DNA from: Paragordius varius | Taxonomy: Eukaryota; Animalia; Nematomorpha | Direction: 5' to 3' | Assembly (NCBI GenBank): GCA_964247055.1 | Contig: OZ176056.1 | Coordinates: forward strand, 1,922,001-1,986,000 | DNA: 64,000 nucleotides | Shown here: positions 1,528-56,890 of the stretch, in pieces | Numbering within the stretch: the first letter of the stretch is position 1 | Layout of the letters: the number at the start of each line of letters is the position of its first letter | The notes under the pieces: model-generated | The model's database searches: none | The model's input: only the letters and a program-made list of their open reading frames with translations | What the model was told of the DNA's origin: nothing | Position numbers and translations under genes: made by a program

Positions 1528-1562
<35 letters not shown>

Positions 1563-3729: not shown

Positions 3730-4020
3730 CTTAAATCAATTATTTTCATGCATGTTATGTGCCGTTTCGAAAAGAATTTATAACCATCTATTTTTTTATA
3801 AGACCAATGCAGTTTCTGTTTTTAATTGTATTTTACAGGTTCTAATATTAACTAAAAGTTACTTCTAAACGATTAGTCTGCTTTATTTTTCCCTTCAATT
3901 TTCGAAATACAAACAATCAAATTTATTTATTGGATAAACAAATTAGTGAATTAACTACACTATTACATCTATAATATTTTTATGGAAAATCTTTCAAAAA
4001 TATTATATATGACAAATAAA

Positions 4021-6157
4021 TTATTCAGGTGCCGGCTTTAGATTTTTAATGGCTTCTTCCAAAACTTCTAAAATTATAAATTAAATACAGTTATGATTAA
4101 ATTTATAATTATAATGTTTAACACTGTAAGTTATAGTTTAAAATATATTTGTTATCTATATATACCTTTTGATATATCAGGATCCTCTAATAATGCATCT
4201 AGAATTAACATAAAAAATAGTTTATTTGGCCAAAGTGAAATTTATATTAACTATCGAATGTAGTGAATAACAAATTAGTTAATGAACTGAGTATATAATT
4301 AATTTTTTTTTCTTAGGAGATATATTGTATATAAAATTACTCAATTTATACATGGGTTATAAATTTTCTATTACTGATTATATTTAGTGATTATGACATT
4401 ATGTGTGACAGGATTATCAATTTGCTTAAATCAATCGAAATAATAAAATTAGTAAAAATATCTTTTTTAAAAAAATAAAATTATATTTTAAATTTTATAA
4501 AATATTTTACTTTCAAATCCTGCATCTGGAAACATGGCGCCTAGATCAATGAGAGAAATAATTAAAGTTATGTCATATAACCAGATATTTAAATATTTTA
4601 TAATTAACAATATTTTAAAAGAAAAAATTATATAATATATTAAAATTTTGTCAATTTTTATCTTAAATTTTTTTTACATTTTATTAAATAATAATATAAT
4701 AAAATTAATTACTTTCATTTGCTTTGTCGATTAAATCTAATTAAGGTAATATAATTATGAAAAAGTGATTTGCTTATATTTTTTAACCTAAGGGTTGATT
4801 GTCGAATGAGAAATTTAATTTTTTTAGGTTATCCGAATGTTTAAAAATATTTTTATTAAAATTACCTATTTTTTGGTTATAATATTAAATTTCATGGATG
4901 TTCATTCAAATTAAAACTATGTATATCCGTATCGTATTATAATTAACTTTAAAATATAATTAATAAACTATAAGTGGAGATTTATTTTAAAGTAACACAA
5001 TATTAAATTGACACTTTTTTGGAAATTTTGCGTTTGTTAATGTGATAAGATTAATGTCACCTTGAATAGTGTCCATCATATCTATATATACTGTTTAAAG
5101 CCAAAAATATTTTTTTGTATTTAAATACATTAACAAAAAATATACTGCTAATGCGCTCTTTCAAAGCTAAATTTGATATACATAATTTATTTAATGTGTT
5201 TTTTCAATTTTTAGAATTATAAAGCATACATTTTATGGATACTTTCATGCCGTCTATAAAATAATTTATATAAATATTAAACAAAACACAAAAACGTAAT
5301 CCTAAAAATTCTCAAATATAAAAGAGTACTTGAAAAATACAAGACTGTCATTTTTTTAAAAATATTCAACAATTTTAATCCTATATGTGCGGTTGGAAAA
5401 TCAGCGTGTCTCTGAAACCTAAATGGCTTAAATAAATATATTTTAAAAACCGGCAGTTTTAATAATTATTCGAATTTATTGTTATTACTAATTTAGGTGA
5501 TTTTAAACAAATGTCGTCAATTAATACACAATAATTTTTTTAAACATTATATAAATTTCATAACTTATCACAAAATTTATCACAATGTGGGCTCTTATAG
5601 TAATCTTTACATACAATTTTTTTTTCATTAAACCAATTTTATTTTAATTGTTTAAAAAAAATACCAATTTTGGCCCGATCTATATAAAATTTAATGATTT
5701 AATTAAAATTTTATAAATTATATTGCCATTAAAATTACTTATATTTTCTGGACCTAATCAAGAAGTAAAATATTTTAAAATATAATTTTTATAATGAAAA
5801 CTATATAATAAAAATATATTACTGATATTTCGCGTTTCCTCCAAAAAATTTTTTGATTCTAATTATATATATGGATAATTTTAATTAAAGATCTTTAAAA
5901 AATAAAAATAATTGCTACAAAATAAAACATAAAAATGTTAAGATTAGATCCTAAATTGTATTGAAGAGTATATTGAAATACAAAGCTATTTTGATTTAAA
6001 AATGAAAGGTAAGTAAAAAATAAATATATATGTCAATAAATTAAAAATTTGATGGTATTTAAAACTTTATTAGAGTCTTCAGGAGTTCTTGGGAAAAATA
6101 CAACATCATTTAATTAAAAAAACTTTTATAAGTTATTACGTATTAAATCACATGATT
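4021..6157 (-). CDS. Micro-exon chain 1, copy A (unknown acidic protein, C-terminal part)
   Basis: AG/GT-bounded phase-1 exons: 6140-6157 (18 nt), 5823-5858 (36), 5739-5753 (15), 5665-5679 (15), 5330-5344 (15), 5230-5253 (24), 5146-5166 (21), 5061-5081 (21), 4713-4736 (24), 4511-4540 (30), 4166-4198 (33), terminal 4021-4067. Translation: ..SCDLIQSKNFLEETRNISPENINRAKIVLYFSNGMKVSIKSLKERISNMMDTIQDLIDKANESAMFPDAGFENALLEDPDISKEVLEEAIKNLKPAPE*. An alternative ATG lies at 5351. Confidence 0.8.
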
Positions 6158-7060
6158 CTATAAAACATTTTTTACCAAACGCAACATTTTCTATCCAAAC
6201 GAAATAAAAAAAGTTTCTTTTAGTTGAAAAAATGTTGCGATGAATGAATGTTGCATTTGATTGAAAATGGTATAATTATAATTAAACGGGCTTTTTGAAA
6301 ATTCAAATTAAATTTTAAAAAAATCAAAATATATCAACTGCCATAAAGTAATTTTAAAAACCTTATTGGAATCTTTATAAATTATTATAAGTCATACAAT
6401 TAGATATAAAACATGAGATTTAAGCTTTTTCGATTTTTAAAATTTTGATATTTTTTGTTATTACAAATATGGTAAAATTTTTAAACCTTCTACATTTTAG
6501 ATAAAAGAGTTGAAACACAATCTATTTTTCTTGATTCACTTTTATTCTTTTAGGGTATTGGCCGCTAAAAAGATAAGGGAATTTGAAGAACAATCGCAGT
6601 GGTATTTCTTAAAAATTTTAACTAGCCGTAAAAGAGCTTTTAGGGCTGCGGTTTAAATTAAATTATTAGCTTTATACAAAAACCCAAGTCTCTTAAAAGC
6701 GTACAACCAGTATAAATTCACAAACGCCAATTAAAAAGAGTGGAAAATTATGAAGACTAGTGACCTGATTTTTAAAATTAGCCAGCAATATAATGTCCAC
6801 CAAGGCAACTCAAGTTTTTAGTAAGACTATGTTTTTAAACAAACTTCTTGAATATTTTTTATTTTTACAAATATTTTGGATCATTATAATTCATTAAAGC
6901 TAATGAATAAATTATACATTAACTTTCATCATTCTTCCAATAAATTTTAATTTATAACAGCTGAATTTTGGTTTATATTTTATAAAACGTATTTTTTGAA
7001 AAGTCAGTAACCATCTAAGAGAACGGTTCCAATGTTAAAAACCGGTATTAAAAGTTATAC

Positions 7061-8410
7061 TGTAAGCCAGGTCTTCCAAATTTTAAGAGATATGCTGTTT
7101 ATTTTAAATTTTTACAACCCGATTGTGATTATAAACGAGCAGAAACCATTGAAATTTTGGTTCCACTTTTTTTTGACTTGGTTTTCCGGGCGTTAGTTTT
7201 CATGTTTTGTCCTTATAATTTTAATTTTTATCAATATAGATTCTAAGTAAGACATATACCTTCCATAAGATTGGATCCTTCTGCAGAGGTAAAATAAATA
7301 TATTCAATACATCAGTAAATTACTAAGTACCTGTATTCAAATTTTCGACATCTGAAATATATGGTTTATATCATTAAAATCATAACGATATATGTGCAAA
7401 AATGATTTTCAAAAATTGCTCAATTATCTTTAAAAGATGTGTTTTATAAAAATATTTAATATATAAGAAATTTAGAATTGAAAAACATACGCTCCAATAT
7501 TTGTCGGCCTATAAAATTAAAGTGAAATAAAATTCTTTTTTTTTGAAAAAAATTAAATAATATAATTTTTTCGAATTGTACCTTGAACGATTCTGTCATG
7601 ACTAGTTTTAAATCTTTTGCCTTATGTAAAATATTATAAAAAGTATACTTGGTCGAAGTTCTAATTGATATAGAAACGAATTATAAATTGTTAATTTAAC
7701 CTTAATCGTATTTAGGTCAAATTTATCCAATCTATAATAAATTTTGATAGCGGTATTTTATGTGTTTATTTAAAGTAATAAAAAGTTTTTTGGTTACCCT
7801 TTTTTCAGAAAAAATATTTTTTTTTAACTTAATGCTAAATTAAATGAAATTTACAATCACAAATGACTTTATAAAATTAATTAATTCACTTATGTTCTTT
7901 AAGTGCTGATTACCCAATTTTATTTTTTGAAATTAATAAATTAAAGATTTAATATGTTATAAAAAATGAAGTCTAGATTACTTATAAATATGAAATAATC
8001 CCTCTATTTAAACAATTTTTTTATTATTTCAAAAAATATCGGCTTTTGAAATATAAATATTTCTTTTTTGCATTAAAATGTAAGTTATACCGCTTATATC
8101 ATCCTCACCTACATCATAGTCTAAATTTAGGGAAATATATATATATGTATACATTAATCTTTACAAGGATAATATAAATTAGCCAAATTTATAAAATAAT
8201 ATAATATTTCGTGATTATTCTTAAACTTTTATTTAAATTATGGTTTTTTATTGTCATACATCTTTTTAAAGATGTCTATTTTGATTGCATATTAATTAAA
8301 AGGTTAAAAAAATTTTCATCAGTTTTTTTGGAGACCTATTTTTATAATTTGGTTTCATGTTGTGTGATATGGAATCATACATTTCATAATTGATATAATA
8401 TTTAGCCGAC
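7061..8410 (-). CDS. Micro-exon chain 2, copy A
   Basis: Exons: 8381-8410 (30 nt), 8091-8120 (30), 7890-7905 (16), 7701-7731 (31), 7649-7660 (12), 7582-7601 (20), 7491-7508 (18), 7331-7351 (21), 7260-7280 (21), 7061-7094 (34). The lower part reads RQILEHVENLNTEGSNLMEAYLLKFG. Splice sites are conserved in copy B. The frame above 7601 is ambiguous, and the 34-nt exon is 33 nt in copy B. Confidence 0.65.
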
Positions 8411-8589
8411 CTAGGGTTAAACTGCTTATATGTTAAAAAACTTTGGTAGCAAAAAAATATATGTGCTAAAAAAGTTTGGTTTTTAAAATTATTTAAAAAA
8501 ATTACAAAACATTAATAAAGGTAATATTAATTAAATTAATACTGCAATTTTATCTAAAAATTGTACATCCACCATATCATATCATATTT

Positions 8590-11500
8590 TTAAAAATTTA
8601 TGAAAGGCACGGCTAAGGTCATATAAACTAATAATTTTTTTTATAAAAATCTACTTCTTTGAAGACCGGATGGTCCAGGTTGGGGTTCTGTGGCCTCTGT
8701 TTAAAATATAATTGGAAAAAATAATATGTATATCATAAAAATATTTAGCTAGTATTTTAATTAAAACCTGATGTGCTTGGGGTAATTTTAGATATGGTAT
8801 TATCAGAACCTGTAGAAAATATATTTTTTAATAAAAGTATATAAATCACAGCTAATTTTTCAACAACAATAGTATTTTCTAATTTTCTTATTTATATTAC
8901 CATAAAATAATGTATAAATAGATAGAGCCGAATTAAAAAAAACCTTCAGTTGATGCTGGATTTACACTGGGCCCTGATAAAAATTAAATATTTGCTTTTA
9001 GTTATAAAGTATGTTTTTTTAATTTTTGAACATAAACCGCCAAAGATACTTAGGTTAGGGTATAATACAGTCAATAAAGTAAAAATTGTTTCTAAAAATA
9101 ACAGTATTTGAACAAATTTTAAAATTTGTTAATTACTTTGTCACCAAAAATTAACACTAACTTGTCATTACCTGGTTCTAACTGAGCCAATTCGCCTCCA
9201 TCATCTAGATTTTTAGATTTATTTTTAATCATATCAATTTATAAAAATTTCCAAAATAGATTTTAATTGGTTTCAAATAGTTTAGCGAAGCAAATATTTC
9301 AATTAAATAATTTTATACAATTTGCAATGTGTTTAATTACTTATTGTAATATTGAAAAACCAGAAATTACAAAACAAAAAGTTATTTTTATATGAAACAA
9401 TTTAATTATTATATATATTATTACCAGTATTAGCAATTGTTTCAACCAATTTAGCTGCTTCAGTGATTTCCACTATTTCAAAAAAAATTAAATTTATAAA
9501 CCAAAGTAAAATTTATAATATATGGTTAATTTGATAATTAATTTTTATCATAACATATAATTTTTTGGATGATTAAATTATATACCTCCATCTACAACAT
9601 TTTAATTTTTAAAAAATTATTTGAGTTTTACCTGTGAGGACAGTGGCTATATATTGAAAATATTAAATTATAATTTTATATAATTTATAATATTAAAATT
9701 TATCTTTGAAGTGACCGTTTTTTTAACAAAGCAATTAGTAATAAAAATTTAATTGAAATACTTAATTGCAAATTCATACAAAAATTAAATCACAAGGCCA
9801 AAGTTTATGTTTCTATGGTTATATTAGGTGAATAACTTATCCAAATTCTACTCGTAATTAAAGAAAATTTTTTTAAATTTTAAATATTTTATCAATAACT
9901 CTACAATTTCCTGTTAAAAAAATGTGCTAAAATTATTATGTATAAAAATCAGAGTCCTTATACATTCGACCCACCTTAAATGGCCCTCCCAGCAAACTAT
10001 AGTAACGCGCTAAAAAATAAGCTCATGTTTCGATGTTTAAATAAAGTCTTGGCTTTAAATTATAATTTTCACTAGTTGTTAAGTCAGAGAGCAAATAGCA
10101 ATAAAATCAATTAAAATGTAATCATTTTTTAAAACTTCAAAAATAGTAAAGATATATTGTTGATATTTTACAGTTCTTGCGAATAAATCGGTTTTTTTAA
10201 TTATTTATTGGTAATGTTGTCGGTGTTGAATATACAATAAAAATTGAAATTATACGGACAAATCGTAATAATATAAAGACAAATATTATCTTTCCAAAAG
10301 ACAACCATACTTTTTAAATCTTAATTTATATAAATATAATTTATTGTTTTGAACTGTAGTAAAGTATGTAATAGAGATGTATATTGGAAACACAATCAAT
10401 TAAGTATTTTTTTGCGATTAAATGATTTTTATGGGATTTTATGGTTTAAAAAAGTATGCTTGTCTTTTGAAATAAAAATTTTGTCTTTATATTTTTACTT
10501 TTTGTCCGTATATTATCAATTTTTACTGTACTGTATATATACATACAAGTTTAAATGGCGTAACCTTAAATGCGATCAAAGAAAATAAGTAATGACTGGA
10601 CTGAAACAATATTTACATATTTTTACTTCATAAAATAAAAGATTCTAGCCAATAATTTTTAATTAAGATAGGGAGAGTTAGGATCAAATATATACATTAG
10701 ATATATTCATACAAGCCAATATAATAAATTCATATCTTAAAAAGGTCAAATCAATTAACCACTTTGTAACAAAACTTGTTCTTTATGCAAGACTATGCTT
10801 TGTGATACTATACGGACAAAACGTACAAAAAAGGATTTCTCACAAAGTCAAATATTGATTTGCCCTAATTTTTCCCCATTTTAATTTTATGTTTTTATTT
10901 AATTTTTTAAGAATTTAAATCTCAATTTATCATTTTGTAAACGACAAAAGGCTGAGTTGATTTTCAATGTCAACATTTTAAGAAAGTGTTGTCTCTTATA
11001 GAAAGCCCTTCTTTGAGTTTTTCCGTTTTGTTTGTATGATTATGGTAAAATATTAATTTGAAAATAAAATTACATTTTACATTATAAAAATACCCGAACT
11101 TTTATCCGGTAATATTAAAACATTTGCAATATAAATTAAATCATTATCGTTTACCTGCCACTGAAAATATTAAATAATATAACTTTATAAAAAATATTTT
11201 TGTGATTCGAATTGGTAAATTTTAACCAAAAGAATTATTACACATTGCTGAGCCTAATATTTATCATTTTAAACATTATTAATAACTAGTTTGAAATATG
11301 GATGTAAAATTTAAAATTTTTTTGTCCATAACATATAAACAAATTTAAAGTTATAAAAAAATTAAATGAATTTTACAATAAAATAACTCACCAAAAAAAT
11401 GTAAATAATTTATCAATATTGGATAAAATATAATTTAGTTTTGATTATTTCTATATTTTTTTATTAATCTCAACGGTTAAAATTACTAACTTTTTTGTTT

Positions 11501-13545
11501 GATATAAAGCAATTATGAAGAAATACCTTGTGGAGCTAAAGCACCTAAGAAGTTTATAAAGCAAATTATATTTCGAGAGATACAAATATGTCGTACCAAT
11601 TCCGATCGCTGCAACAACTAATTTAAATCAATGATAAAATAAAATTAGTAATTAAATTTTTAAAACAAAACTCTTCGATATTTAAACAAAAATTTTTAAA
11701 TAACTGGTGTAATTATTCTTTTTAGGATTAAATAATGATGTAATCCTTAAAATAATGTTTTATCCAGGGGCGTATCTTGCACCGCTATCCTCCAACATTT
11801 TTGTGAATTATCAATTAAATATGAAATATAATGAATGGTAAAATATGCCCATAAAATTTTTAAATGTTGATATTTATTTTATTCAAATTTTTCTGGATAT
11901 ATTTTGCTAAATTGGTGAATTAGTATATATTAAGAACGCGATTACAGTAATGTTCCCTTTATTTTATCAAAAATTTATTTTTTTTCGTTAAATTGGCATA
12001 AATATTTGGTAAAGAATGGAAAAACAAGAGCTTTATGATAATTCTTATACCTTTTTGATGAATATGATATACTGTTAATACCATAGAGCACTTGTTTTTT
12101 CCATTCTTTAACAAATGTTTATACCCATTTAACGAAAAAAAAATAAATTTTTAATGAAATAAAGGATACATGACTGTAATTTGAAAATGCGTTCCATGAA
12201 GCCATTTGTATTAATTACCCTTTTTTTACCCATTCTTATATTATTTATTTGTATAAATTGTGAGTTAATCAAAGTAATTAATTTTATTATATCCTTAAAT
12301 GTAAATGTACTGTTTTTATTTTTATTTATAAAATCCTTAAATTTTCTACTGTTTGAAATCATGTAAATGTTGACAATAAATGCCATTATGTCTAATTATT
12401 TGTCCAAACTGTCCCATTTAAAGAAATATATAATAGAAATATGAGTAGAAATAGTATACCAGGAGAAGCATCTAAAAGTTTTTTTCCATCAATGCCAGAA
12501 TCCTTTTTATGTTAAATATATTTTTATACTTGAGTCCGACCTTTGATTGGGTTTGTTTTGTTGGGCCTTTCATACTTCTTCTAAAAAATATAACATTACT
12601 ATAAAGTTTTATTTAATGGCAATTTTATATCATTGAATTTATTTCAAACGTGTAGATATAAACTTTTATACACTAAAATTCTAAGCACGGAAAAATATCA
12701 GTTAAAATCTTATGAATATAAAAAGTAGCAAATTATTTTTTTATAATAATATGATGCAATATCAGTAAAAAATTAATTTATTGAATTTTCGTAGATTTCT
12801 CTAACTTCTTCGGACGAACACAAAAATAAAGCCTGATTATTAATGCATTTTTAAATATAAATACCGTTGTATTAGGGTCTTTCTTTATATTCGCAGCTAT
12901 ATTGAAAATGAATAAGATTCACAATTATTATATAAAAACATCACATTAACTTTAACCATTTCACGTTAAAAAATGATTCGACATTGTATTCCAAATCGGT
13001 CAAAGCACTTTCTTATTTTTATTCTTATTATTATCGTTAAGCTTTTTTATTTCAAATAAACGGACGCTCTTCATTCCTAACTATGAGCTTTAAAATACTG
13101 CCTGCATTTTCCAAATATATAAACAAATTTTTTTATAAAGATCGTTGGTTAACATTGTGTAAAAATATAAAAACCTTTAGACTAAAAAATGAGGTAATCA
13201 ATTATTTAACATAAAAATAAGATTTACAATTGAGCAAAGGCAGTTAATATACAGTATGCATTTTAATGGTTGCTTATTTTATAGTAGAGTAATTTGCAAC
13301 ACAGGAGTGTATGTATGGAAAAAAGAAAGGATTAAATTGTTTATTTTATATTTTGTTGTTTTTTCCATACACTAATACTGTGTTGCAAATCGTCTATAGT
13401 GTGAAATAATCAGCCATCAAAATGCATACTGTAATAAAAATTTATATGTATTCTTAATTATCTATTTTTTTTAAAGCATGTTCAAATACTTATAATTTAG
13501 ATAGAATAAAACCCACACGCTTTTACTTGTTTCACCGGGCCCTGC
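8590..13545 (-). CDS. Micro-exon chain 3, copy A (13 exons)
   Basis: Exons: 13527-13545 (19 nt), 12865-12896 (32), 12576-12580 (5), 12530-12540 (11), 12460-12471 (12), 11597-11617 (21), 11527-11544 (18), 11155-11160 (6), 9632-9646 (15), 9425-9472 (48), 9172-9204 (33), 8655-8696 (42), 8590-8627. Translation: AGPGETTANIKKDPNTTKKSDSNASPVVAAIGIGALAPQVAATVLTVEITEAAKLVETIANTDDGGELAQLEPEATEPQPGPSGLQRIYMTLAVPFINF*. Confidence 0.8.
10235..10528. mobile_element. MITE family 2 (TA|CAGTAAAAATTGAAATTATACGGACAAA termini)
   Basis: Inverted ends ...TTTGTCCGTATA...TTTTACTG|TA. Related pieces occur at ~1-230, ~13790-13855 and ~37460-37710. Confidence 0.75.
11945..12176. mobile_element. MITE family 1 copy (shared with 54041-54262)
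   Basis: Same termini and hairpin-like arms as 17602-17832; intronic in chain 3. Confidence 0.85.
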
Positions 13546-14304
13546 CTAAAAAAGTATGATTAATTTTTTTGTAAAGCCTAAATTTATATTGTACAGTAAA
13601 AATCGGAATTTTGAGACAAAACCTGAAAACATAAAGACAAATATTTTTTTGAAAAGCAATCATATTTTGAAATCCTCTTTATAAGTAGAATATATAAATT
13701 GTGTTACGAATTAACATCTTTATTTCATACTTTGCAGTTTGATATAATGAGTTATAATTAAAATAATCAAGTCTTAAAAAAAACGATAGCCGTGTTGAAA
13801 TAATTTGTATTTATATTTTTACATTTTGTCGGTATAATTTCAATTTTCACTGTAATTATATATTATGCAGAACAGTTTTCAATTACAAGACCTAATAAAA
13901 ATATTTATCCATCAACTGAGTTTCATTTGAATCTGAAAAAATAAAACAGATGATACAATTATTTCCTTATTGAGTTTGACCCGGCTTATAATTCGCGCTT
14001 GTGATTATTAAAAATAACCAGTCAATACTTAATAACATATTTTAGAAATACAAATATGAATTTGACATATGGTAGATTTAATTTTATGTCCAAATAAATA
14101 TATATAATCATATATATGGTCATAGAAAAATTGAATTTTCACTCTCTGTGCCATTTAACTACTTATATTATTAAAGCGGAAATTGCATTTATAAGCAATA
14201 AGATCGTTATTTTTTAATCGGTCAAACCAAAATTTCTTGTATATGGTGTAAATTAAACAATGAATCACTACAATACGTAGTTTAATATCATATTATCATA
14301 AAAC

Positions 14305-14572
14305 CAGGGGTATCCAACACAAATGGCTTCGCGGGTCTTTTTGAATCAAAAAAATCGGCGGACCGCATTTGAAATATTTTGTATATATAGGTATTTATAA
14401 ATATTTGATTTGAATAATATTACAAAATACACTAGTTTGTTGCCTATCGAATCAAATAAATCAGGAGTTTTGTTTGAAAAATATTGATTTTATATTCATA
14501 GGTATATTTTTAATATTTTTCCAAATTTTCCCCGTGCCTCACGACTTATCACGGAAGTGTTGGACACCCCTA
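14305..14572. mobile_element. Old hAT-like MITE
   Basis: TIRs CAGGGGTATCCAACAC / GTGTTGGACACCCCTA. No clear TSD; degraded in copy B (~56350-56557). Confidence 0.65.
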
Positions 14573-14900
14573 TTTTAATGAAAATATTTCATATACCATT
14601 TCCATTCAAATTTACCCCTGAACAATTAAATCACCCTAAAAATAAATTAGGTGTTTTCGGGCTAATATAACTCCTCATTTATATGAAATATATCTTATTA
14701 GCTTAATTTATTTCTTTTCAATATTATTATAATTACAAAATTTCATTCTTTCAAATATAAAAAAATATAAGGTTTTAATCTTACACTTAATTTATTTAAG
14801 GGTGTTGAATTGTTCGAGGGCGAATTTGTTTGTTTAAGGGGGAATTTGAATTGTAAATGGTATATATAAAGATTATATATTGGATTCCAAAATATATTAC

Positions 14901-16997
14901 TTATTGCGAATTCTGTAACAGACACGTTGGGTATTTTAGTGAGATTCTGCAAATTCAAAAATTTGATAAATAATGATCCCAAATATAATTATGCAACAAA
15001 AAAGGGATTATTTTTAATTATAACTTGTATATTTTCTGAAATTCCTAATAATAAATATGTACAAAAATATAAATTATAAATCGATTGAAACAGCAAAACA
15101 TTTAAAAATTCTCATTTTCCTTTTTAAAAGTCTCTTATAATGTATGATTCAGAATCATACGATGTCCGCTTTATAATGGTATTTTAAAAATATGGAATAA
15201 AGATTTGACAATGACTTAAAAAACCACGAACTATAAAAGTTTTTTTTTTCATAAAATTTTGCGGAAAAGTCGAAACAAAAAATTGCTTATTTGAAACCAA
15301 TTTTAAAATAATTCTAGTATCAACCATTGTAATGCATATTTAGAGTTTTTTTCGACAAAAGCATATATGTATACTTTGTTCAATGTCCGTTCTGGATTGA
15401 TTAGTATTAGGTGAATTATTGTCATCCTTGATCTCAATAACTAATTTACAATAAAATGTTAACTATATGTAAAAAATATCAATTGACTTTGGCTTATATA
15501 TTTTTTTGAAAAAAAATTTATTCATATTAGTTAATCATAAATATTAATATTCTGAAGTAATTTAACAAATTATAATCAGGTAAAAATATAATAATATGTA
15601 AGTGTATATCTTTACCGAATACAATTTGTTTACGATATGCTATATAATTTTATAAAAAAATTATTAAAATTCGTAAAGCACAGATCAATATATTAAACCG
15701 GTCGATTGGCTTTATAATACCATTATTTGCAAACTTTTATCAATATTTAAAAAATATACCATTGCTCTTCTTTATTCTTAAAAACTTTAAATTCACCTTC
15801 AAGCATTTTAAATAACTCTAAAAATTGTGTTTTTGAATATCTTAAATTACATATAGTTTTGTAAAATAAAATTTTAATATTATTATTACATACGGAAAAA
15901 CAATGCCATGGCATTGAGAAAGATACCATTCAATAAATACAGTCATGTATCCTTTATTTTACCAAACATTTATTTTTTCGTTAAATGGGTTTAAATATTT
16001 GGTAAAGAATGGGAAAAACAAGAGATCTATGGTAATTCTTATACTTTTTTTGATGAATTTGATATTGTTAATACCATAGAGCTCTCGTTTTTTCAATTCG
16101 TTAACAAATATTTATACCCATTTAACGAAAAAAAATAAATTTTTGATAAAATAAACGATACAAGATTGTAAGTTCACTCATAATTTTTTAGGAGTATTTT
16201 AATTGCATGAAATCATCAAGGTAAGGAGGTGTGAACTCCATCAAATCACTTTCAATATTACAAATTAATAAAATAATGCTATCAATTAAAAATTTTCAAA
16301 TTTTTTTACAATTAATATAACTTAAATAAAATAATTATATTTAAATAACATTTACAATTTTTTCATATTTTAAGCAAATAATTTAGTTATATATATATTT
16401 TCTCTATCAAATACCAAATTAAAGGTTAATCACAAATTATTGTTTATTCTAAAGAAATTTTAAACCGACTAGCCTAAAATACTAAAATATACGAATGCCA
16501 TTTATCACATAATGTTCAGGTCATGATGATGAATCGTTTATATAATGATTGATTTTACATATCGATTTAGTTATATATATTTAGTATTATAATATGTCAA
16601 ATTCATATTTTGTTGGAAATTTATAGAAACTCAAAATTTAGAAATTTACTGCATAGCTAAAGTCTAAAAAGGTTATTGGTCGAATATGAAGTAGAGACAT
16701 ATTATTAGTGTTAAAGGTATTTAATAAGTGACTGACTGCTTTTAGTATATTTATTTACTAACGTTGTAGAGGTGTAAAGGTAAAAAAGCGAATAATTGCA
16801 ATGAATTACAAATCCTTACTCTATTAACTAATTTTAAGACCATATCACTCAAATATAAATTTTTGAAAATCTAAGAATCTGTAAATTATTTTAAAATCAA
16901 AAATTAACATAATTTGCCATTTAAAGCAATCAAAAAGGTTTTCGTAAAAGCACAAATCGGTGCAAATTACCTGTCGTTTGGCTTAGTAGAATACATG
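14901..16997 (-). CDS. Upstream candidate micro-exons (chain 4), copy A
   Basis: Exons: 16971-16997 (27 nt), 15721-15733 (13), 15616-15639 (24), 15375-15440 (66), 14901-14946 (46). Segments read FANNAYRKQIVFVIEIKDDNNSPNTNQSRTDIEQ and NLTKIPNVSVTEFAI. Synonymous changes in copy B: GCA/GCG, AGC/AGT, ACA/ACT, TTC/TTT. The full connectivity is unresolved. Confidence 0.5.
15940..16168. mobile_element. MITE family 1 copy (shared with 57946-58175)
   Basis: TACAGTCATGTATCCTTTATTT left end and a degenerate right TIR. Confidence 0.85.
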
Positions 16998-17601
16998 CTA
17001 TAAAATTATAAATTAATGTTCGCATAATAGCATTCATCATCGGAATATTTAATAAAATACTTTTTAAAAAAATATTTGGTTATTCACGTTAAAAAACATT
17101 TTATAAGGTCAGATATCCATAGTACAAGGTACGTTTCAACTACAATGTAATTATAAACAAGTTAACAAACATTCTTTCTTAAAAGTTATAACAGCCTAAG
17201 CAAAACAAAGTTAAATTACGTTTAGGATTAAAAATTATTTTGCATAAATACTTTGTGAACAATTTTAATTTTAAAGGGATTTATAAATCCGTGCGAAATT
17301 AAGCAACAATATAAGTTTTTAAGTATATAAATCAATAATTTGAAGCAAAAAACATCCTTTTTCACATTATTTCAGGTTAAGTATTAATAAATACTTATTC
17401 TTGTAATATTTTAATTTTTAATGTTACGATTAGGCCATTTATTATTTAAGTTTCGCTAATTAAACTTAAATGCAAAAAGGATGAATTAATGATAACTGAT
17501 TTCTTCGAATTGAAGGGAGTCAACTCATTTCAAAAAAATCGTCAAATATTTTTAATAGATTTAAGAAACGCAAGACCATTACAGCCATTATATATTAATT
17601 A

Positions 17602-17832
17602 CAGTCATGTATCCTCTATTATATCAAAAATTAACATTTTTTTCGATAAATGGGTATAAATATTTGGTAAAGAATGGAAAAAACAAGAGCTCTATGGTAT
17701 TAACCATATCATATTCATTAAAAAGAAAAGAACTACTATAGGGCTTTTGTTTTTTCCATTCTTTACCAAATATTTCTACCAATTTAAACGAAAAAAAAAT
17801 AAATTTTTGAAAAAATAAAGGATACATGACTG
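17602..17832. mobile_element. MITE family 1 (TA-flanked, Tc1/mariner-like), copy A only
   Basis: TA|CAGTCATGTATCC...GGATACATGACTG|TA with long inverted arms. The TA site is empty in copy B (~59628). Confidence 0.9.
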
Positions 17833-44278: not shown

Positions 44279-46444
44279 TTATTCAGGTGCCGGCTTTGGA
44301 TGTCTAATGGCTTCTTCCAAAACTTCAAAAATAATTAATTAAATACAGTTATGATTAAATTTATAATTATAATGTTTAATACTGTATGTTATAGTTTATT
44401 GTTATCTATATATACCTTTTGATATATCAGGATCCTCTAAGCCTAATGCATCTAGAATTATCATAAAAAAATAGTTTATTTGGCCAAAATCGGTATATAA
44501 TTATGGTGTGCAGGGAATAAAAAAATAGATAATGTTCTGCTTTTTAATTAATATCAGTATTTTTTATCATATGAAATATATTTTATATAAAACACTGTCA
44601 TACACGGTTTTAAATTTTTTATTCCAAATTATATTTACTGATTTCGACATTATGTATGACAGGATTATTAATTTGCTTAACAATCGAAATAATAAAATTA
44701 ATCCAAATTTTCTAAAAAAATAAAATTATATTTTAAAAATTTATAAAAAATTTATTACTTTCTACTCCTTCTGGAAACATGGCGCCTATATCATTAAGAA
44801 AAATATATAATGCCATATAACCAAATATTTGATATATTTAAATTAACAATATTTTAATTAAAAAAAATATATAATTAATTAAGTAATTTGTCAAGTTTTT
44901 TGATAATTTTTTTTCCTGCATTTTATTTAACAATTAATAATAATAATAATAATATTAAAATTAATTACTTTCATTTGCTTTGTCGATTAAATCTAATTTA
45001 AGGTAGCATAATTGTGAAAAAGTGATTCGCTATTATTTTTATAACATAAGGGTTTAATTGTTGAATGAATAAATATTTGATTTTTATTGATTAATTTTTT
45101 TTGAACATTCATAATTTTTTTGGGTTTATTACAGTGCTTCATGAATGTTCTTTCAAATTAAAACTTTAAATATCCCCATATTGTAATTAACTTTATAATT
45201 TAATTAATAACTAAGCGGAGTAAAATGATTTATTTTTAAAGTAATATAATATAAAATAGTTATAATGACACTTTGCGTTTGATAAAAAGATATGCTTTAT
45301 ACCTTGAATAGTGTCCACCATATCTATATATATTGTTTAAAGCCAAAAATATTTTTTTGTATTTGAATACATTAAAATACAAAAAATATACTGCTAATGC
45401 GCTCTTTCAAAGCTAAATTTGATATATATAATTTATTAAATTTGTTGAAAATTTTTTCAATTTTTAGTATTATAAAGCATACATTTTATGGATATCTTCA
45501 TGCCATCTATGAAATAGATTACATAAATATTGAATTAACAAAACACAAAAAAGGTAATCTAACAAAAATCTTTCTCAAATATAAAAGAGTACTTGAAAAG
45601 TACATGTCATTTTTTTCAAAATATTTAACAATTTTCCTATATGTGCGGTTGGAAAATCAGCGTGTCTCTGAAACCTAAATGGCTTAAATAAATATATTTT
45701 AAAAACCGGCAGTTCTAATAATTATTCGAATTTATTGTTATTACTAATTTAGGTGATTTTTTAAACTAATGTCGTCCATTAAAACACAATATTTATTTTA
45801 AGCATATTTCATATAATTTATTTCATTTTTTATCACAAAATTTATCCCAATGTGAGATCTTAAATTAATCTTTACTATATTTATTTATTTTATTAAACCA
45901 AGTCACATTTAATTATTTGAAAAAAATTACCAATGTGGGCCCGATCTATCCGAAATTTAAAATTAAAATTTTATAAATTATATTGCCACAAATATTACTT
46001 ATATTTTCTGGACCTAATCACGAAATAAATATTTTAAAATATAATTTTTATAATGAAAACTATGTAATAAATATATCACTAATATTTCGCGTTTCCTCCA
46101 AAAAGTTTTTTGATTCTAATTATACACACATATATATATATATATATATATGGATAATTTTAATTAAAATTTAAAAAATAAAAATTAAAAATGCTACAAA
46201 ATAAACATAAAAATCATAGAATTAATATTGGCCCTAAAATGTATTATAGTATATTGTAATACAAAGCTATATTGATTTAAAAATAAAAGGTCATTGAGTT
46301 ATAAAAATCGGTATATATGCCAAAAAATTAAAAATTTTATGGTATTTAAAACTTTGTTAGAGTCTTCAGTAGTTCTTGGGAAAATACAACAAACATATAA
46401 TCAAAAAAACTTTTATAAGTTATTACGTATTAAATCACATGATT
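44279..46444 (-). CDS. Micro-exon chain 1, copy B
   Basis: Exons: 46427-46444, 46080-46115, 45999-46013, 45931-45945, 45483-45506, 45392-45412, 45303-45323, 44969-44992, 44759-44785 (27 nt), 44416-44451 (36 nt), 44279-44322. Versus copy A there are synonymous changes (AAT/AAC, ATC/ATT) and +/-3-nt indels. The 15-nt exon's acceptor is lost, but an in-frame ATG is present at 45605. Confidence 0.78.
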
Positions 46445-46955
46445 CTATAAAACATTTTTTACCAAACGCACATTTTCTATCCAAACGAAATAATAAATGT
46501 TTCTTTTAGTTGAAAAAATGTTGCGATGAATGAATGTTGCTTTAGATTGAAAATAGTATAATAATAACGGGCTTTTTGAAAATTCAAATTAAATTTTAAA
46601 AAAATCAAAATATATCAACTGCCATAAAGTAATTTTAAATCCCTTATTGGAATCTTTAAAAATTATTATAAGTCATACAATTAGATATAAAACATGAGAT
46701 TTAAGCTTTTTCGCTTTTTAAAATTTTGATGTTTTTTGTTATTACAAATATGGTAAAATTTTTAAACCTTCTACATTTTAGATAAAAGAATTGAAACACA
46801 ATTTTTTCTTGATTCACTATTATTCTTTTAGGGTATTGGCCGCTAAAAAGAATTTAAGGGAATTTGAAAGACCTCGCAGTGTTCCCCAAATAATTTTAAC
46901 GGGCCGTAAAAGAGCTTTTAGGGCTGCGGTTTAAATTGAATTATTGGCTTTATAC

Positions 46956-48247
46956 TAATGTGACCATATATTTTAAACTTTGACGCAGTACAAAATAAAA
47001 ACATACTTTGCAGTTTTTACACCATCGGTGTGGTATATTACAGTTTCCACAAAAATTATAAAATATATATATTCTGATAGGAATATTAGGATTATAATGG
47101 TGCTTGTGGTTAAAATGTTTAGATATGAGCTCTGAAAGTCCCAAATTTTTTAGTTCTTTTAAAATGGACTGTTTTATTAAAATGAACGGGAAAATTCCGA
47201 CATTGTGCAATATTTTTTAATATATGCTAAATTGATATCAATTAAATATATTTTTTAAAAAATGCATTTCAAAATTTATAGCATTTTGTTAAAGCGTCAT
47301 ATTATTTTAAGCATGATGGAAACGAATATACACGTTTGAGATGTTATACCATTTATATATATAATTACGATAATGGTTAACATTTTTTTCGCTCAGAATT
47401 TTGAGTGAATTATTCGTTCGTTTTCAAATTTATGTTAAATAAGAATTGTGTTTGTTACAAAAATTCACCAAAATTTGCAAGCAAACAAACCTTTAAATTA
47501 AACAACCTATAGTAATGTTCAGCATCCTTGAGTTATTTAGAAAAAGGGTTTATTATATTTTAAAGCGTTAAACCGTTTCCATCATGCTTCAAAATAGTTT
47601 GAAGAACGCTTCAACAAAATATCTCAAATTTGTTAAGGCAAAAAAAAGAAAATTCAAAAAATTAAAGTTTAGTAATATCATACCTCCCACCTAATGAGTA
47701 AACGTAAATAAAAACTCTTAATTTTTACGAAAAAAGGGTTCAAAATTATGCCATTATAATAAATTTAAAAGTTATGGTAACAATTTTCCATACAATTTTC
47801 GATTTGATATAACAAAAAATTAACTTTCTAAACTTGATCAAACATTTATTCAAATATTATAAATATTTTTTTAAGCCCCGAGTGAAAGAGCCATCAGCCT
47901 GAATCTTACGGTGTCTAAATATAGTTTCGCCACTTCGCGAAAGCCTGCAATCATAAGCGGTGATACAAAATCCAATCTTTATAATTCGAGAAGAAAATAA
48001 AATATTAACCAATTAAAAATAGGCTAATCTTAGTTTTTTACCGCAAAATGAACCATTTCTTTACAGATTATGGGTTTGTTTATACAGAGGGAATATATCT
48101 TTTCGAATAAATAAAAGTTAATTAATATATAATTATTAATAATTATTTTTTTTAAAAAAGCAGTACAAAAATGGGCGCAGTACAGTCGCAGTATTTTTCT
48201 GAATATCCAGTACTGTACTGCGAAAAACAGCCTATCTGGTCACATTA
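46956..48247. mobile_element. Non-autonomous hAT-type element (1.29 kb), copy B only
   Basis: TIRs TAATGTGACCATATA / TATCTGGTCACATTA, with 8-bp TSD CTTTATAC at 46948-46955 and 48248-48255. The site is empty at ~6670 in copy A. Subterminal GCAGTACA repeats are present. Confidence 0.9.
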
Positions 48248-48658
48248 CTTTATACAAAAACCCAAGTCTCTTAAAAGCGTACAACCAGTATAAATTCACA
48301 AACTACGCCAATTATAAAGAGTGGAATTATGAAGACTACTGACCCGATTTATTAAAATTAGCCAGCAATATAATGACCACATAGGCAAGTTTTTAGTAAC
48401 ACTAAGTGTTTAAACAAAATTTCTTTATAAATTATATATTTGATTTTACAAATACTTAATTTTTTAAGAATGTGAAAGAATAAATTATACAATAACTTCA
48501 CACTTTTTATATCATCATTCTTCCAATAAATTTTAATTAATAACAGTTGAATTTGGGTTTATATTTTATAAAAAGTATTTTTTTGAAGAGTCAGTAACCA
48601 TTTAAGAGATCGGTTCCAATGTTAAAAACCGGTATTACAAAATAACCATAAGTTATAC

Positions 48659-50094
48659 TATAGCCAGATTTTCCGAATTTTAAGAGATATGCTGTTAATT
48701 TAAATTTTTTTCCAACCCGATTGTGGTTATAACCGAGCAGAAACCATTCTGATTTTGGTTCCACCTTTTTCGGTCTGGTTCAAAGCGCTCGCAGTTTTTT
48801 ATGTTTTGTTAAAATTTTAATTTTTTCTCCATGTTAAAATTTTATATAGATTTTAAAACTAGCTAATATCACCTTCCAAAAGATTAGATCCTGCTGCAAA
48901 TTTAAATTTAAAAAAAATCATAACATAAATATATTTCATTTATCAATTAATAACTAAATACCTGTATTTAAATTCTCGACATCTAAAATATATCGTTATA
49001 ATTAAAATCAAAACGATATATTAATATTTGCAAAAAGGGTTTATAAAAATTGCCCAGTTAGCCCTAAAAGATATTTTCTTTAATATATAGGATATTGAGA
49101 TTTTAAAACATACGCTCCAATATTTGTCGGCCTTTAAAATTAAAGTGAAATAAAATTCTTTTTTGAAAAAAAGTTTAGAAAGTATTATTTTTTAGGATTT
49201 TACCTTGAACGATTCTGGCATGGCTAGTTTTAAATCTTTTGCCTTATGTAATATTATAAATAGTATACTTTTTTGAAGTTCTAATTGATATGAGAAACGA
49301 ATTATAAATTGTTGGTTCAACCTTAATCGTATTTCAGTCAAATTTATCCGTTCTGAAATAAATTTTGATAACGGTAATTTATGTGTTTTTTTAAAGTAAT
49401 AAAAAGTTTTTTGGCTATCGTTTTTAGAAAAAAATATATTTTTTGTAAATAAATGAAGCTAAACTAAAAAGAATTACCTCACTTAGGTTCTTAAAGTGCT
49501 GAGTACCCAATTTTATTTTTTGAAATTTATTTTATAAATAAACCAAGATTTTATATGTAACAAAAAATGAAGTCTAGATTACTTATATACATAAATAATT
49601 ATATTTAAACAATATTTTCATTATTAGCAAAACATAATGGCTTTATTTTTTGGATTAAAATGTAAATTATACGGCTTATATCATCGTCAACTACATCAGA
49701 GTCTAAATTTATGGAATTATATATAAGTATATTTCATCAGAACTGATATCAGCAAAATTAAAATGGAGTCTTAAGAACTAACTTAATTTCGGCCTTAAAT
49801 TTTGAATATCGGTCTACTGACCTCTGAGTTTATGCTTTAACCTTTAAAAAGAAAATATAAATTAGTCAAATTATATATAAAATTAATATTTCATGATTAT
49901 TTTTAAACTTTTATGTGGAATATGGTTTTTTTAAATTGTCATACATCCTTTTAAATGTGTCTATTTTGATTGCATATTAAAAGGTTAAAAAATTATCAGT
50001 CTTTTTGGACATCTATTTTTTATAATTTGGTTTCATGTTATATAAATGTGATATGGAATCATACATTTCATAATTGATATAATATTTAGCCTAC
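48659..50094 (-). CDS. Micro-exon chain 2, copy B
   Basis: Exons include 50065-50094, 49114-49131, 48962-48982, 48873-48893 and 48659-48691. Synonymous differences from copy A include GAA/GAG, TTG/TTA, CGG/AGG and TTT/TTC. Confidence 0.65.
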
Positions 50095-50271
50095 CTAGGG
50101 TAAAACTTATGTGTTAAAAAACTTTGGAAGCAAAAATAATATAGGCATTATTAATTTATTTTAATAAATTACAAACCAAATATTAATTAAATTAATACGC
50201 TTGCAAATTTTTTAACTAAAAATTTATTTTAATTAAACATAACTTTACATCCTTTATATCATATGATATTT

Positions 50272-55594: not shown

Positions 55595-56890
55595 CTAAAA
55601 AATGATTAATTTTTGTAAAGGCTAAATTTATATTATACAGTAAAAATCGGAATTCTAAGACAAAATTTGAAAACATAAAGACCAATATTTTTTTCAAAAG
55701 CAATCATATTTTGAAATCTTAATTTATAAGTAGAATATATAAATTGTGTTACGAATTAACATCTTTATTTCATACTTTGCAGTTTGATATAATGAGTTAT
55801 AATTAAAATAAACAAGTCTTAAAAAAACGATAGCCGTGTTCAAATAATTTGTATTTATATTTTTACATTTTGTCGGTATAATTTTAATTTTCACTGTAAT
55901 TATATATTATGCAGAACAAGTTTTCAATTACAAGACCTGATAATAATATTTATCCATCAACTGAGTTTCATTTGAATCTGAAAAAATAAAACAGATGATA
56001 CAATTATTTCCTTATTGAGTTTGACCCGGCTTATAATTCGCGCTTGTGATTATTAAAAATAACCAGTCAATACTTAATAACATATTTTAGAAATACAAAT
56101 ATGAATTTGACATATGGTAAATTTAATTTTATGTCCAAATAAATATATATAATATATATATGGACATTGAAAATTGAATTTTCACTCTCTGTGCCATTTA
56201 ACTACTTATATTATTAAAGCGGGAATTGCATTTATAAGCAATAAGATCGTTATTTTTTAATCGGTCAAACCAAAATTTCTTATATATGGTGTAAATTAAA
56301 CAATGAATCACTACAATACGTAGTTTAATATTATATTATAATCTTAAAACCCAGGGTATGCCCCGAATATATATATTTAGTATAAATATTTAATCTTTTG
56401 AATAAATATTACAAAATACACTAGTTTGTTGCCTATCGGATAAAATAATTCAGAAAATATTTTAAGAAATAATAATTTTATATAGGCATATTTTTTAGAA
56501 ATTTTCCAAATTTTCCCCTTGCCTCACGAATTATCACGAAGTGTTGGACACCCCTACTTTTAACCAAATGAAAATATTTTACAATTCAAATTTACTACAG
56601 AACAATTAAATCACCATAAAAACAAATTAAATGTTTTCGGGCTAATATAACTCCTTATTTATATGAAATATATCTTATTAGCTTAGTTTATTACTTTTCA
56701 GTATGATTATAATTTTAAACAAAATTTTATTCTTTCAAAATATATAAAAATATAAGGTTTTAATATTAAAAAACACTTAATTCATTTAAGGGTGAATTTG
56801 AATGTTCGAGGGCTAATTTGATTTTTTGAGGGTGAATGAATTGTAAACGGTCTATATAAAGACTATATATTTGATTCCAAAATATATTAC

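What the first reader, a model, noticed from the sequence alone, without database searches (positions are those of the whole stretch)
4021..16997. Hidden micro-exon gene system: ~40 exons of 5-66 nt over 13 kb, invisible to ORF calling
Seen: a run of AG/GT-bounded islands on the minus strand, nearly all multiples of 3 in phase 1, which join into stop-free frames (chains 1-4). The independent duplicate at 44279-59007 keeps the splice sites and differs mainly by synonymous changes and 3-nt indels, the signature of coding constraint. Known: this symmetric micro-exon architecture defines Schistosoma MEG genes, where exon skipping generates protein variants. Inference: this is an analogous combinatorial protein-diversity locus in a different lineage. 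Chains 3, 2 and 1 are partly phase-compatible, so they may form one long gene with alternative 3' ends. I recognise no known domain in the products.
Basis: partly seen in the sequence, partly recalled or inferred. Interest (0 to 1): 0.92.

Follow-up and report, generated by a model that had tools for sequence, protein, structure and literature searches.

The report
Duplicated hidden micro-exon gene
This AT-rich animal DNA very probably holds a real gene cut into about 31 tiny, mostly frame-neutral exons that join into a roughly 294-residue acidic secreted or membrane protein. It is built like the micro-exon genes of blood flukes and the bicycle genes of aphids, and it is present twice in a tandem duplication, but no RNA data could be obtained to show the splicing.

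Summary
On the minus strand, 17040-4021, 31 exons join into one ATG-to-TAA frame of 885 nt (294 aa): a first exon that looks like a signal peptide, 29 internal exons of 6-66 nt, and a last exon. Of the internal exons, 25 are multiples of 3 and 27 start in phase 1. The four odd ones form two adjacent compensating pairs.

Support that does not depend on my exon choice:
- About twice as many splice-bounded GC islands on this strand as in three controls, with an excess of multiples of 3.
- Strong codon periodicity in the joined exons.
- An AG|GTA donor consensus.

Support from copy B (59050-44279):
- Exons diverge 6.0% against 9.0% for introns.
- All 6 exon indels are 3 nt, against 30% of small intron indels.
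- Splice dinucleotides are kept at 92%, against 75% for intronic AG/GT.
- dN/dS is 0.49.

It has about 31-36 exons, not 40. Substitutions are mostly non-synonymous by count. Copy B has lost 5 splice sites, and copy A has a TAG in one candidate exon.

No RNA evidence was obtainable, so splicing and exon skipping remain unshown. The scan has already reported many such genes in this genome, on other DNA.

The parts
16971..17040 (-). Exon 1, copy A: ATG at 17040, 70 nt. It encodes a signal-peptide-like start (basic residue, then a 12-residue hydrophobic core) and ends in phase 1.
   Evidence: Sequence read; translation; donor CAG|GTAATT.
15797..15817 (-). Exon 2 (21 nt, phase 1 to 1). The copy B homologue (57821-57801) has lost both its acceptor (GG) and its donor (GG).
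15375..15440 (-). Exon 3 (66 nt, the largest internal exon, phase 1 to 1).
15025..15044 (-). Exon 4 (20 nt, phase 1 to 0). First half of a compensating pair with exon 5.
   Evidence: The A/B change here is synonymous in this frame.
14901..14946 (-). Exon 5 (46 nt, phase 0 to 1). Second half of the pair; 20+46=66.
13892..13932 (-). Candidate exon 6 (41 nt, phase 1 to 0), uncertain. Its last codon is TAG in copy A (13894-13892) and CAG in copy B (55939-55937). It pairs with the 19-nt form of the next exon.
13527..13545 (-). Exon 7, with two acceptors 4 nt apart. The 19-nt form (13545) follows exon 6. The 15-nt form (13541) keeps the frame when exon 6 is left out.
12865..12896 (-). Exon 8 (32 nt, phase 1 to 0). 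First half of the second compensating pair.
12541..12580 (-). Exon 9 (40 nt, phase 0 to 1; 32+40=72). The copy B homologue has a 3-nt insertion and a lost donor (CT).
12460..12471 (-). Exon 10 (12 nt).
11597..11617 (-). Exon 11 (21 nt). Start of the central hydrophobic segment.
11527..11544 (-). Exon 12 (18 nt).
11242..11253 (-). Exon 13 (12 nt).
11155..11160 (-). Exon 14 (6 nt, TGGCAG). Identical in copy B. Too short to test from sequence alone.
9964..10009 (-). Exon 15, boundaries ambiguous. The modelled form is 10009-9971 (39 nt). Alternatives are 9996-9964 (33 nt) and 10009-9964 (46 nt, coupled to a 5-nt exon at 11098-11094). Copy B has lost the 10009 acceptor (TG).
9632..9646 (-). Exon 16 (15 nt).
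9586..9591 (-). Exon 17 (6 nt, ATGGAG).
9425..9472 (-). Exon 18 (48 nt). Identical in copy B.
9172..9204 (-). Exon 19 (33 nt). Open only in phase 1; phase 0 meets a TAG.
8944..8973 (-). Exon 20 (30 nt). Copy B has a 3-nt deletion.
8768..8809 (-). Exon 21 (42 nt). Copy B has two 3-nt insertions.
8655..8696 (-). Exon 22 (42 nt, 55% GC, the strongest island). Identical in copy B.
8091..8120 (-). Exon 23 (30 nt).
7491..7508 (-). Exon 24 (18 nt).
7331..7351 (-). Exon 25 (21 nt).
7260..7280 (-). Exon 26 (21 nt).
5739..5753 (-). Exon 27 (15 nt).
5665..5679 (-). Exon 28 (15 nt).
5146..5166 (-). Extra candidate exon (21 nt, phase 1 to 1, good splice sites, identical in copy B). Not in the 31-exon model. 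Including it keeps the frame.
5061..5081 (-). Exon 29 (21 nt).
4511..4540 (-). Exon 30 (30 nt). Copy B has a 3-nt deletion.
4166..4198 (-). Exon 31 (33 nt). Copy B has a 3-nt insertion.
4021..4067 (-). Last coding exon (47 nt), ending in TAA at 4023-4021. The copy B acceptor is lost (TG), but an AG 3 nt further in would keep the frame.
3922..3931 (-). Two overlapping AATAAA signals about 90-100 nt after the stop codon. Probable end of the transcript.
   Evidence: Sequence read.
44279..59050 (-). Copy B of the whole gene. All exon homologues are present, and the exon chain that includes exon 6 has no internal stop (311 aa). Five splice dinucleotides are lost: both sites of 57821-57801, the donor of 54655-54613, the acceptor of the exon starting at 51730, and the acceptor of 44325-44279. 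A 1.28-kb insert with inverted ends lies in an intron (46951-48252).

Best explanation
This is a real protein-coding gene of the micro-exon type, present as two tandem paralogues. Copy A runs 17040-4021 and copy B 59050-44279, both on the minus strand.

Shown from sequence:
- A first exon begins at an ATG, encodes a signal-peptide-like start and ends in phase 1.
- It is followed by 29 internal exons of 6-66 nt (mean 26.5) and a short last exon with TAA and AATAAA.
- The exons join into 885 nt (294 aa) spread over 13 kb.
- Exons are GC-richer islands (39%) in very AT-rich introns (21%) of 40-1506 nt, with canonical AG|GTA donors and T-rich YAG acceptors.

Inferred:
- The spliceosome recognises each island by exon definition, helped by the GC contrast.
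- Nearly every exon is symmetric in phase 1, and the four exceptions sit in two adjacent compensating pairs. So exons can be gained, lost, resized by 3 nt or skipped without breaking the frame. The two paralogues differ in exactly these ways: 3-nt indels, and loss of the splice sites of a symmetric exon.
- The product is an acidic (pI 4.5), Cys-poor protein without internal repeats. All six N-glycosylation sequons lie in the 84 residues between the signal peptide and a central hydrophobic segment that is borderline for a membrane span. This segment is itself spread over 4-5 micro-exons. A 168-residue acidic tail follows.
- The most likely product is therefore a small type-I surface glycoprotein, or else a secreted protein.

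Whether isoforms are made by exon skipping is unknown. Each copy carries possible lesions, so one of them may be decaying. Copy B is the more likely, because the loss of one donor breaks a compensating pair.
For: - One closed ATG-to-TAA frame in copy A; copy B's chain has no internal stop.
- Frame-blind excess of splice-bounded GC islands and of lengths that are multiples of 3, on the minus strand only (p values).
- Codon-position composition of the joined internal exons: chi2=83.5, p=7e-16.
- Over the whole coding sequence, GC1>GC2>GC3 = 0.50/0.40/0.29 and purines at position 1 are 72%. The proposed frame has only its terminal stop; the other two frames have 17 and 33.
- Donor consensus not used in the selection: A at -2 in 21/30, G at -1 in 21/30, A at +3 in 23/30.
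- A versus B: exon divergence 5.95% against 9.0% for introns (p=0.0013) and 9.9% for near flanks (p=0.0002).
- Exon indels are 3 nt in 6/6, against 59/197 small intron indels (p=0.0007).
- Splice dinucleotides kept 57/62, against 580/775 intronic AG/GT (p=0.0017).
- dN/dS 0.49, Fisher p=0.011.
- Rejected candidate islands show 1-nt and 4-nt indels between the copies.
- Protein features: pI 4.47, one Cys, hydropathy peak 1.61 at residues 108-126, six sequons all at 38-97, C-terminal part with 32 D/E against 11 K/R.
- The published gene-structure classifier for aphid bicycle genes scores this gene at p>0.999 (coefficients from PMC9168663).
Against: - There is no RNA evidence at all.
- I chose exons partly by their openness in phase 1, so the closed frame is partly built in.
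- 6-nt exons cannot be tested from sequence.
- Several boundaries are ambiguous (exon 15; exons 6 and 7).
- Copy A has an in-frame TAG if exon 6 is used with the first acceptor of exon 7. Copy B has lost 5 splice sites.
- The constraint is only moderate, and the copies are young (85-100% identical, with conversion patches).
- No homology search or structure prediction of the spliced protein was possible.
- The membrane-span call is borderline, and the segment has P, Q, G and S in its middle.
Confidence: 0.8

Rival explanations
1. Both copies are decaying pseudogenes of a once functional micro-exon gene. The islands are real former exons, but no protein is made now.
For: Copy A carries TAG at the end of candidate exon 6, and skipping that exon while using the first acceptor of exon 7 also meets a stop. 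Copy B has lost both splice sites of exon 2, the donor of exon 9, the acceptor of exon 15 and the acceptor of the last exon. dN/dS is 0.49, not low. No RNA run holds the last exon.
Against: All 62 splice sites of copy A are intact. Copy A has a stop-free path through the second acceptor of exon 7. All exon indels are 3 nt. Exons and splice sites are better kept than introns. Exon 6 has only 27% GC and may not be an exon. Three of copy B's lesions are frame-neutral if the exon is skipped or if an AG 3 nt away is used.
Confidence: 0.12
2. It is a chance pattern. AT-rich DNA holds many AG...GT intervals, and GC-richer patches (transposon remnants) were strung together by eye into an apparent frame.
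For: Stop-free stretches of 6-45 nt are common. A naive chain finder also builds a 22-exon chain on the plus strand, with score 53.5 against 94.6. Some GC-rich islands in the region are repeat pieces.
Against: Strand-specific excess of islands and of lengths that are multiples of 3. Codon periodicity p=7e-16. Donor consensus at unselected positions. Only 3-nt indels in exons. Splice sites and exons conserved above the intron background. ATG plus signal-peptide-like start at one end and TAA plus AATAAA at the other.
Confidence: 0.04
3. The exons are real but belong to a larger transcription unit, for example alternative 5' exons of the acetyl-CoA carboxylase gene that starts 1.5 kb downstream on the same strand.
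For: Same strand and close spacing in both copies. The pair is duplicated as one unit.
Against: The chain ends in an in-frame TAA followed by AATAAA signals. ACC has its own ATG and a conserved N-terminus. A 2.4-kb insert with a hAT remnant separates the two genes in copy B without other change.
Confidence: 0.04

Closest known systems
Micro-exon genes (MEGs) of Schistosoma and other flatworms
   Same: Most of the coding region lies in very small symmetric exons of 6-81 bp separated by introns of 0.1-5 kb. A few exons are not divisible by three. There is a signal peptide. Products are small and are secreted or anchored in the membrane. The genes are missed by automatic annotation and are duplicated locally (PMC4350168, PMC10526429; here).
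   Different: No sequence relationship was tested or is known. MEGs are described as restricted to platyhelminths, and this organism is unidentified (other agents of this scan guess a horsehair worm). This gene has more exons (31 against 10-20) and a longer product. Isoforms by exon skipping and expression in glands are documented for MEGs and are untested here.
bicycle genes of gall-forming aphids and other Hemiptera
   Same: Many unusually small internal exons, nearly all starting at codon position 2 (the same phase class as here), and an N-terminal secretion signal. The published structure-only classifier scores this gene at p>0.999 (PMC9168663).
   Different: The defining paired Cys-Tyr-Cys motifs are absent: the whole product has one Cys, in the signal peptide. 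The classifier was trained and validated only within Hemiptera. Expression in salivary glands is unknown. The 26-nt intron in the neighbouring gene is, to my knowledge, unlike hemipteran genomes.
Neuronal micro-exons of bilaterian genes (SRRM3/4-regulated cassette exons)
   Same: Exons of 30 nt or less, mostly multiples of 3, that need special recognition and are missed by aligners (PMC7821500).
   Different: Those are single, highly conserved cassettes inside ordinary genes. Here nearly the whole coding sequence is made of micro-exons and the gene evolves fast.

Membership tests
Micro-exon genes (MEG) in the architectural sense | Most of the coding region is made of very small symmetric exons (length a multiple of 3) | tested here: met
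   25 of 29 internal exons are multiples of 3. 22 are 36 nt or shorter and hold 50% of the coding sequence. Internal exons of 51 nt or shorter hold 79%.
Micro-exon genes (MEG) in the architectural sense | The product has a signal peptide and is secreted or membrane-anchored | tested here: inconclusive
   The first exon encodes a basic residue, then a 12-residue hydrophobic core, then small polar residues. There is a central hydrophobic segment with hydropathy 1.61. No dedicated predictor was available.
Micro-exon genes (MEG) in the architectural sense | Protein variants are produced by skipping of symmetric exons | not testable with these tools
   No RNA run holds the gene.
Schistosome MEG families (homology) | Sequence similarity to one of the roughly 25 MEG protein families; platyhelminth origin | not tested
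The organism was not identified.
bicycle genes | Gene structure: many small internal exons, almost all starting at codon position 2 | tested here: met
   27 of 29 internal exons start at codon position 2. The published classifier gives a linear predictor of 11.5, p>0.999, against a cut-off of 0.72 (PMC9168663).
bicycle genes | One or more Cys-Tyr-Cys (CYC) motifs in the protein | tested here: not met
   Copy A has one Cys, in the signal peptide. Copy B has two Cys. No CYC motif is visible in either printed product.
bicycle genes | Hemipteran origin and expression in salivary glands | not testable with these tools
   Organism names are coded and there is no usable RNA.

The most novel reading that the evidence does not exclude
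This locus is one member of a genome-wide, independently evolved micro-exon gene system in an animal phylum where none has been described (possibly Nematomorpha). Phase-1 symmetric micro-exons would be skipped, gained and lost to diversify secreted and surface proteins at the parasite-host interface. That would make it a third convergent origin, beside flatworm MEGs and hemipteran bicycle genes. The exon-by-exon differences between the tandem copies here would be snapshots of that process.
Probability: 0.25. Interest if true: 0.8.

Novelty: new variant of a known kind. Interest (0 to 1): 0.55.

Why it matters
Genes made almost wholly of micro-exons are known from parasitic flatworms and from sap-sucking or gall-forming Hemiptera. 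In both they encode fast-evolving secreted proteins aimed at the host. Another lineage with the same design would argue for repeated evolution. The shared elements are a phase-1 signal-peptide exon followed by dozens of symmetric exons. That in turn would suggest the design is favoured when a parasite needs protein variation that tolerates change.

Practically, such genes are invisible to ORF finders and to most gene predictors. The secreted-protein repertoire of this genome is therefore probably under-annotated. This locus offers a ready comparison of two, probably three, young tandem copies. It shows which changes such genes tolerate: only 3-nt indels, and loss of the splice sites of single symmetric exons.

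Tried and rejected
1. RNA evidence. Two searches for sequencing runs found only runs of unclassified library type (probably DNA) that hold the locus. The RNA runs under the same species label hold none of the sampled words. So I have neither junction data nor a comparison with the other samples that hold the locus.
2. A naive dynamic-programming gene model, using GC log-odds plus simple splice scores. It recovered the central run of phase-1 exons but picked repeat-derived GC patches elsewhere. I used it only as a lead.
3. Exact look-up of the neighbouring ACC ORF in public assemblies, to learn the organism: not on record.
4. Literature. No paper in the library links micro-exon genes with Nematomorpha. 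One horsehair-worm genome has 26.9% GC. That is compatible with this window but is not a test.
5. Homology search, family scan, atlas search and structure prediction of the spliced protein were left out. Single exons (22 aa at most) are too short for those tools.
6. Extra candidate exons at 7211-7137, 7072-7061, 6190-6176 and 13101-13066 were rejected, because the copies differ there by 1-nt or 4-nt indels. Candidates at 7620-7582, 7660-7649, 5253-5230 and 5166-5146 stay open.
7. Rfam found nothing in the window. There are no internal protein repeats and no further paralogue in the window.

Full report
**What the window is**

The window is very AT-rich: 19-29% GC outside a satellite that has 36%. 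It holds a tandem segmental duplication of about 37.5 kb. Window 535-30000 matches 38000-64000 at 78-95% identity by blastn, introns included. A global alignment of the two gene regions shows 76-100% identity per 300 columns, with patches of 99-100% that look like gene conversion.

Read on the minus strand, each unit holds three things in order:
- a 167/168-bp satellite (19357-29981, 64 copies; 62013 to the window end);
- the micro-exon locus;
- 1.5 kb further on, the 5' part of an acetyl-CoA carboxylase (ACC) gene.

The ACC identification rests on Pfam matches to Biotin_carb_N and CPSase_L_D2; a weaker match to Biotin_carb_C falls below Pfam's own cut-off. The ACC N-terminus reads correctly only if a 26-nt GT...AG intron (2297-2272) is removed. 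Rfam finds nothing in the window.

Reading the minus strand shows GC-richer islands flanked by T-rich ...YAG and GTA.... A frame-blind search asked only for YAG, a GC-rich island of 6-80 nt in AT-rich flanks, and GTR. At three thresholds it finds 42, 30 and 22 islands on the minus strand. The plus strand, the reversed sequence and the complemented sequence give 22-26, 13-17 and 8-10, although they keep the same GC islands.

On the minus strand, 24/42 and 18/30 islands have lengths that are multiples of 3 (binomial p=0.0013 and 0.0025). The controls sit near one third. So the run of splice-bounded islands, its strand and its excess of multiples of 3 are more than chance.

**The gene model**

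I joined the islands by phase. This gives one chain of 31 exons in copy A:
- Exon 1 (17040-16971) starts at an ATG, encodes a signal-peptide-like start and ends in phase 1.
- 29 internal exons of 6-66 nt follow (mean 26.5 nt).
- The last exon (4067-4021) ends in TAA, with two AATAAA signals 90-100 nt further on.

The sum is 885 nt, or 294 codons plus the stop, over 13,020 bp. Introns are 40-1506 nt. 27 of 29 internal exons begin in phase 1 and 25 are multiples of 3. The four others form two adjacent compensating pairs, 20+46 nt and 32+40 nt.

Because I used openness in phase 1 while choosing exons, the closed frame is not independent evidence. The following points are:
- In the joined internal exons, base composition differs by codon position (chi2=83.5, p=7e-16). 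G is 36% at position 1 and 12-15% elsewhere.
- Over the whole coding sequence, purines at position 1 are 72% and GC1>GC2>GC3 is 0.50/0.40/0.29.
- Donors show the metazoan AG|GTA pattern at positions I did not select on: A at -2 in 21/30, G at -1 in 21/30, A at +3 in 23/30.

**The duplicate as a test of constraint**

Copy B (59050-44279) holds a homologue of every exon.
- Substitutions: 55/924 aligned exon positions (5.95%), against 1043/11593 in introns (9.0%, Fisher p=0.0013) and 284/2873 in the 50-nt near flanks (9.9%, p=0.0002).
- Indels: all six inside exons are exactly 3 nt. Of 197 intron indels of 9 nt or less, 59 are multiples of 3 (p=0.0007).
- Splice dinucleotides: 57 of 62 kept in B, against 580 of 775 intronic AG/GT (p=0.0017).
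- dN/dS by Nei-Gojobori: pN 0.049, pS 0.096 (close to the intron divergence), ratio 0.49, Fisher p=0.011.

So constraint is real but moderate. Islands that I had rejected differ between the copies by 1-nt or 4-nt indels, as non-coding DNA should.

**Lesions and uncertainties**

Copy B has lost five sites:
- both splice sites of the 21-nt exon 2;
- the donor of exon 9;
- the acceptor of exon 15;
- the acceptor of the last exon, where an AG 3 nt further in would keep the frame.

Loss of exon 2 or exon 15 is frame-neutral. Loss of the exon 9 donor breaks a compensating pair unless exons 8 and 9 are both skipped.

Copy A keeps all 62 sites. However, a candidate 41-nt exon 6 (13932-13892) ends in TAG in A and CAG in B. 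It pairs with a 19-nt form of exon 7. Leaving exon 6 out and using a second acceptor 4 nt further in (the 15-nt form) gives copy A its open frame.

I cannot tell whether exon 6 is a real exon (it has 27% GC), a cassette, or a fresh nonsense mutation. Exon 15 has three possible boundary pairs. Four further small islands may be exons, so the count is 31 to about 36, not about 40. The two 6-nt exons cannot be tested from sequence.

**The product**

The 294-aa product of copy A:
- pI is 4.47. There is one Cys, in the signal peptide, and no internal repeats.
- A hydropathy peak of 1.61 over 19 residues at 108-126 is followed by Arg. The segment is encoded across exons 11-15.
- All six N-x-S/T sequons lie at residues 38-97, between the signal peptide and this segment.
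- The 168 residues after the segment have 32 D/E against 11 K/R.

I infer a small type-I surface glycoprotein with an acidic cytoplasmic tail, or else a secreted protein. This is inference from composition only.

**Expression**

This is the weak point. Runs that hold the locus have an unclassified library type and are probably DNA. RNA runs under the same species label hold none of the sampled words, even for the 163-nt last exon plus UTR. Splicing, expression and exon skipping are therefore unshown.

**Comparison with known systems**

[quoted passage not shown] This allows alternative splicing to make near-identical variants. All have a signal peptide, and the products are secreted or membrane-anchored. 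They appear restricted to platyhelminths (PMC4350168). Their exons are 6-81 bp, mostly multiples of three with occasional exceptions, and their introns are 0.1-5 kb (PMC10526429). The architecture here matches on every structural point.

Aphid bicycle genes have many small internal exons, nearly all starting at codon position 2 (PMC9168663). That is the same phase class as here. Putting this gene's numbers into their published classifier gives p>0.999. But the protein has no Cys-Tyr-Cys motif, so it is not a bicycle gene by that family's defining motif.

Homology to any MEG family was not testable. I therefore file it as working like a micro-exon gene, with membership in either family unproven or failed.

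**Organism and earlier notes**

I could not identify the organism. Earlier agents of this scan call it a probable horsehair worm and report many similar micro-exon genes elsewhere in the same genome. One of these lies about one duplication unit beyond this window and is probably a third copy of this gene. These are unchecked leads.

A published horsehair-worm genome has 26.9% GC, which is compatible. No paper in the library links micro-exon genes with Nematomorpha.

**Verdict**

This is a real, hidden micro-exon gene (confidence about 0.8) in two young tandem copies, with moderate purifying selection and exon-wise divergence. The architectural analogy to MEGs is sound. The claim of combinatorial diversity is untested. 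The find is interesting mainly as one instance of what seems to be a genome-wide feature of an under-studied animal.

Noticed in passing
window 1203-2426 (-) and 32482-40094 (-): The 5' part of an acetyl-CoA carboxylase gene is duplicated together with the micro-exon gene. Copy B runs through the biotin-carboxylase domain exons (Biotin_carb_N, CPSase_L_D2, and a sub-threshold Biotin_carb_C match) and then meets the 10.6-kb satellite. Copy A continues beyond the window start. It is unclear which copy, if either, is the functional ACC.
   Followed up: partly
window 2272-2297 (-): A 26-nt GT...AG intron in ACC. The conserved N-terminus of the biotin-carboxylase domain reads through only if it is removed. 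It sits beside a 638-nt intron in the same gene and kilobase introns in the neighbouring gene.
   Followed up: yes
window 19357-29981 and 62013-64000: A 167/168-bp satellite of about 64 copies at 95% identity, with 36% GC and a strong GC skew. It forms one end of each duplication unit.
   Followed up: partly
window 40601-43057, with 40834-41100 (-): A copy-B-only insert of 2.4 kb between the micro-exon gene and ACC. It holds a remnant of a hAT transposase dimerisation domain (Pfam E=1.4e-6).
   Followed up: partly
window 46951-48252: A copy-B-only insert of 1.28 kb in an intron, with 20-nt terminal inverted repeats (85% complementary). It is probably a non-autonomous DNA transposon.
   Followed up: partly
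window 11942-12182, 15938-16173, 17596-17836, 54037-54267, 57940-58181: A repeat of about 240 bp present in both orientations within introns and upstream of the gene, 77-89% alike. It looks like a MITE.
   Followed up: no
window 33684-34031 (-): A 116-aa ORF with a signal-peptide-like start and an Asn/Glu/Ser-rich remainder. It lies between ACC exons of copy B and has no Pfam match. It may be the first exon of another secreted-protein gene.
   Followed up: partly
window 16554-16254, 15661-15362, 11558-10964 (copy A coordinates): Stretches of 99-100% identity between the two copies, introns included, within a background of 85-92%. This suggests gene conversion between the tandem copies.
   Followed up: partly
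window 738-1054: A 105-bp tandem repeat of three copies (81% matches) inside an ACC intron.
   Followed up: no
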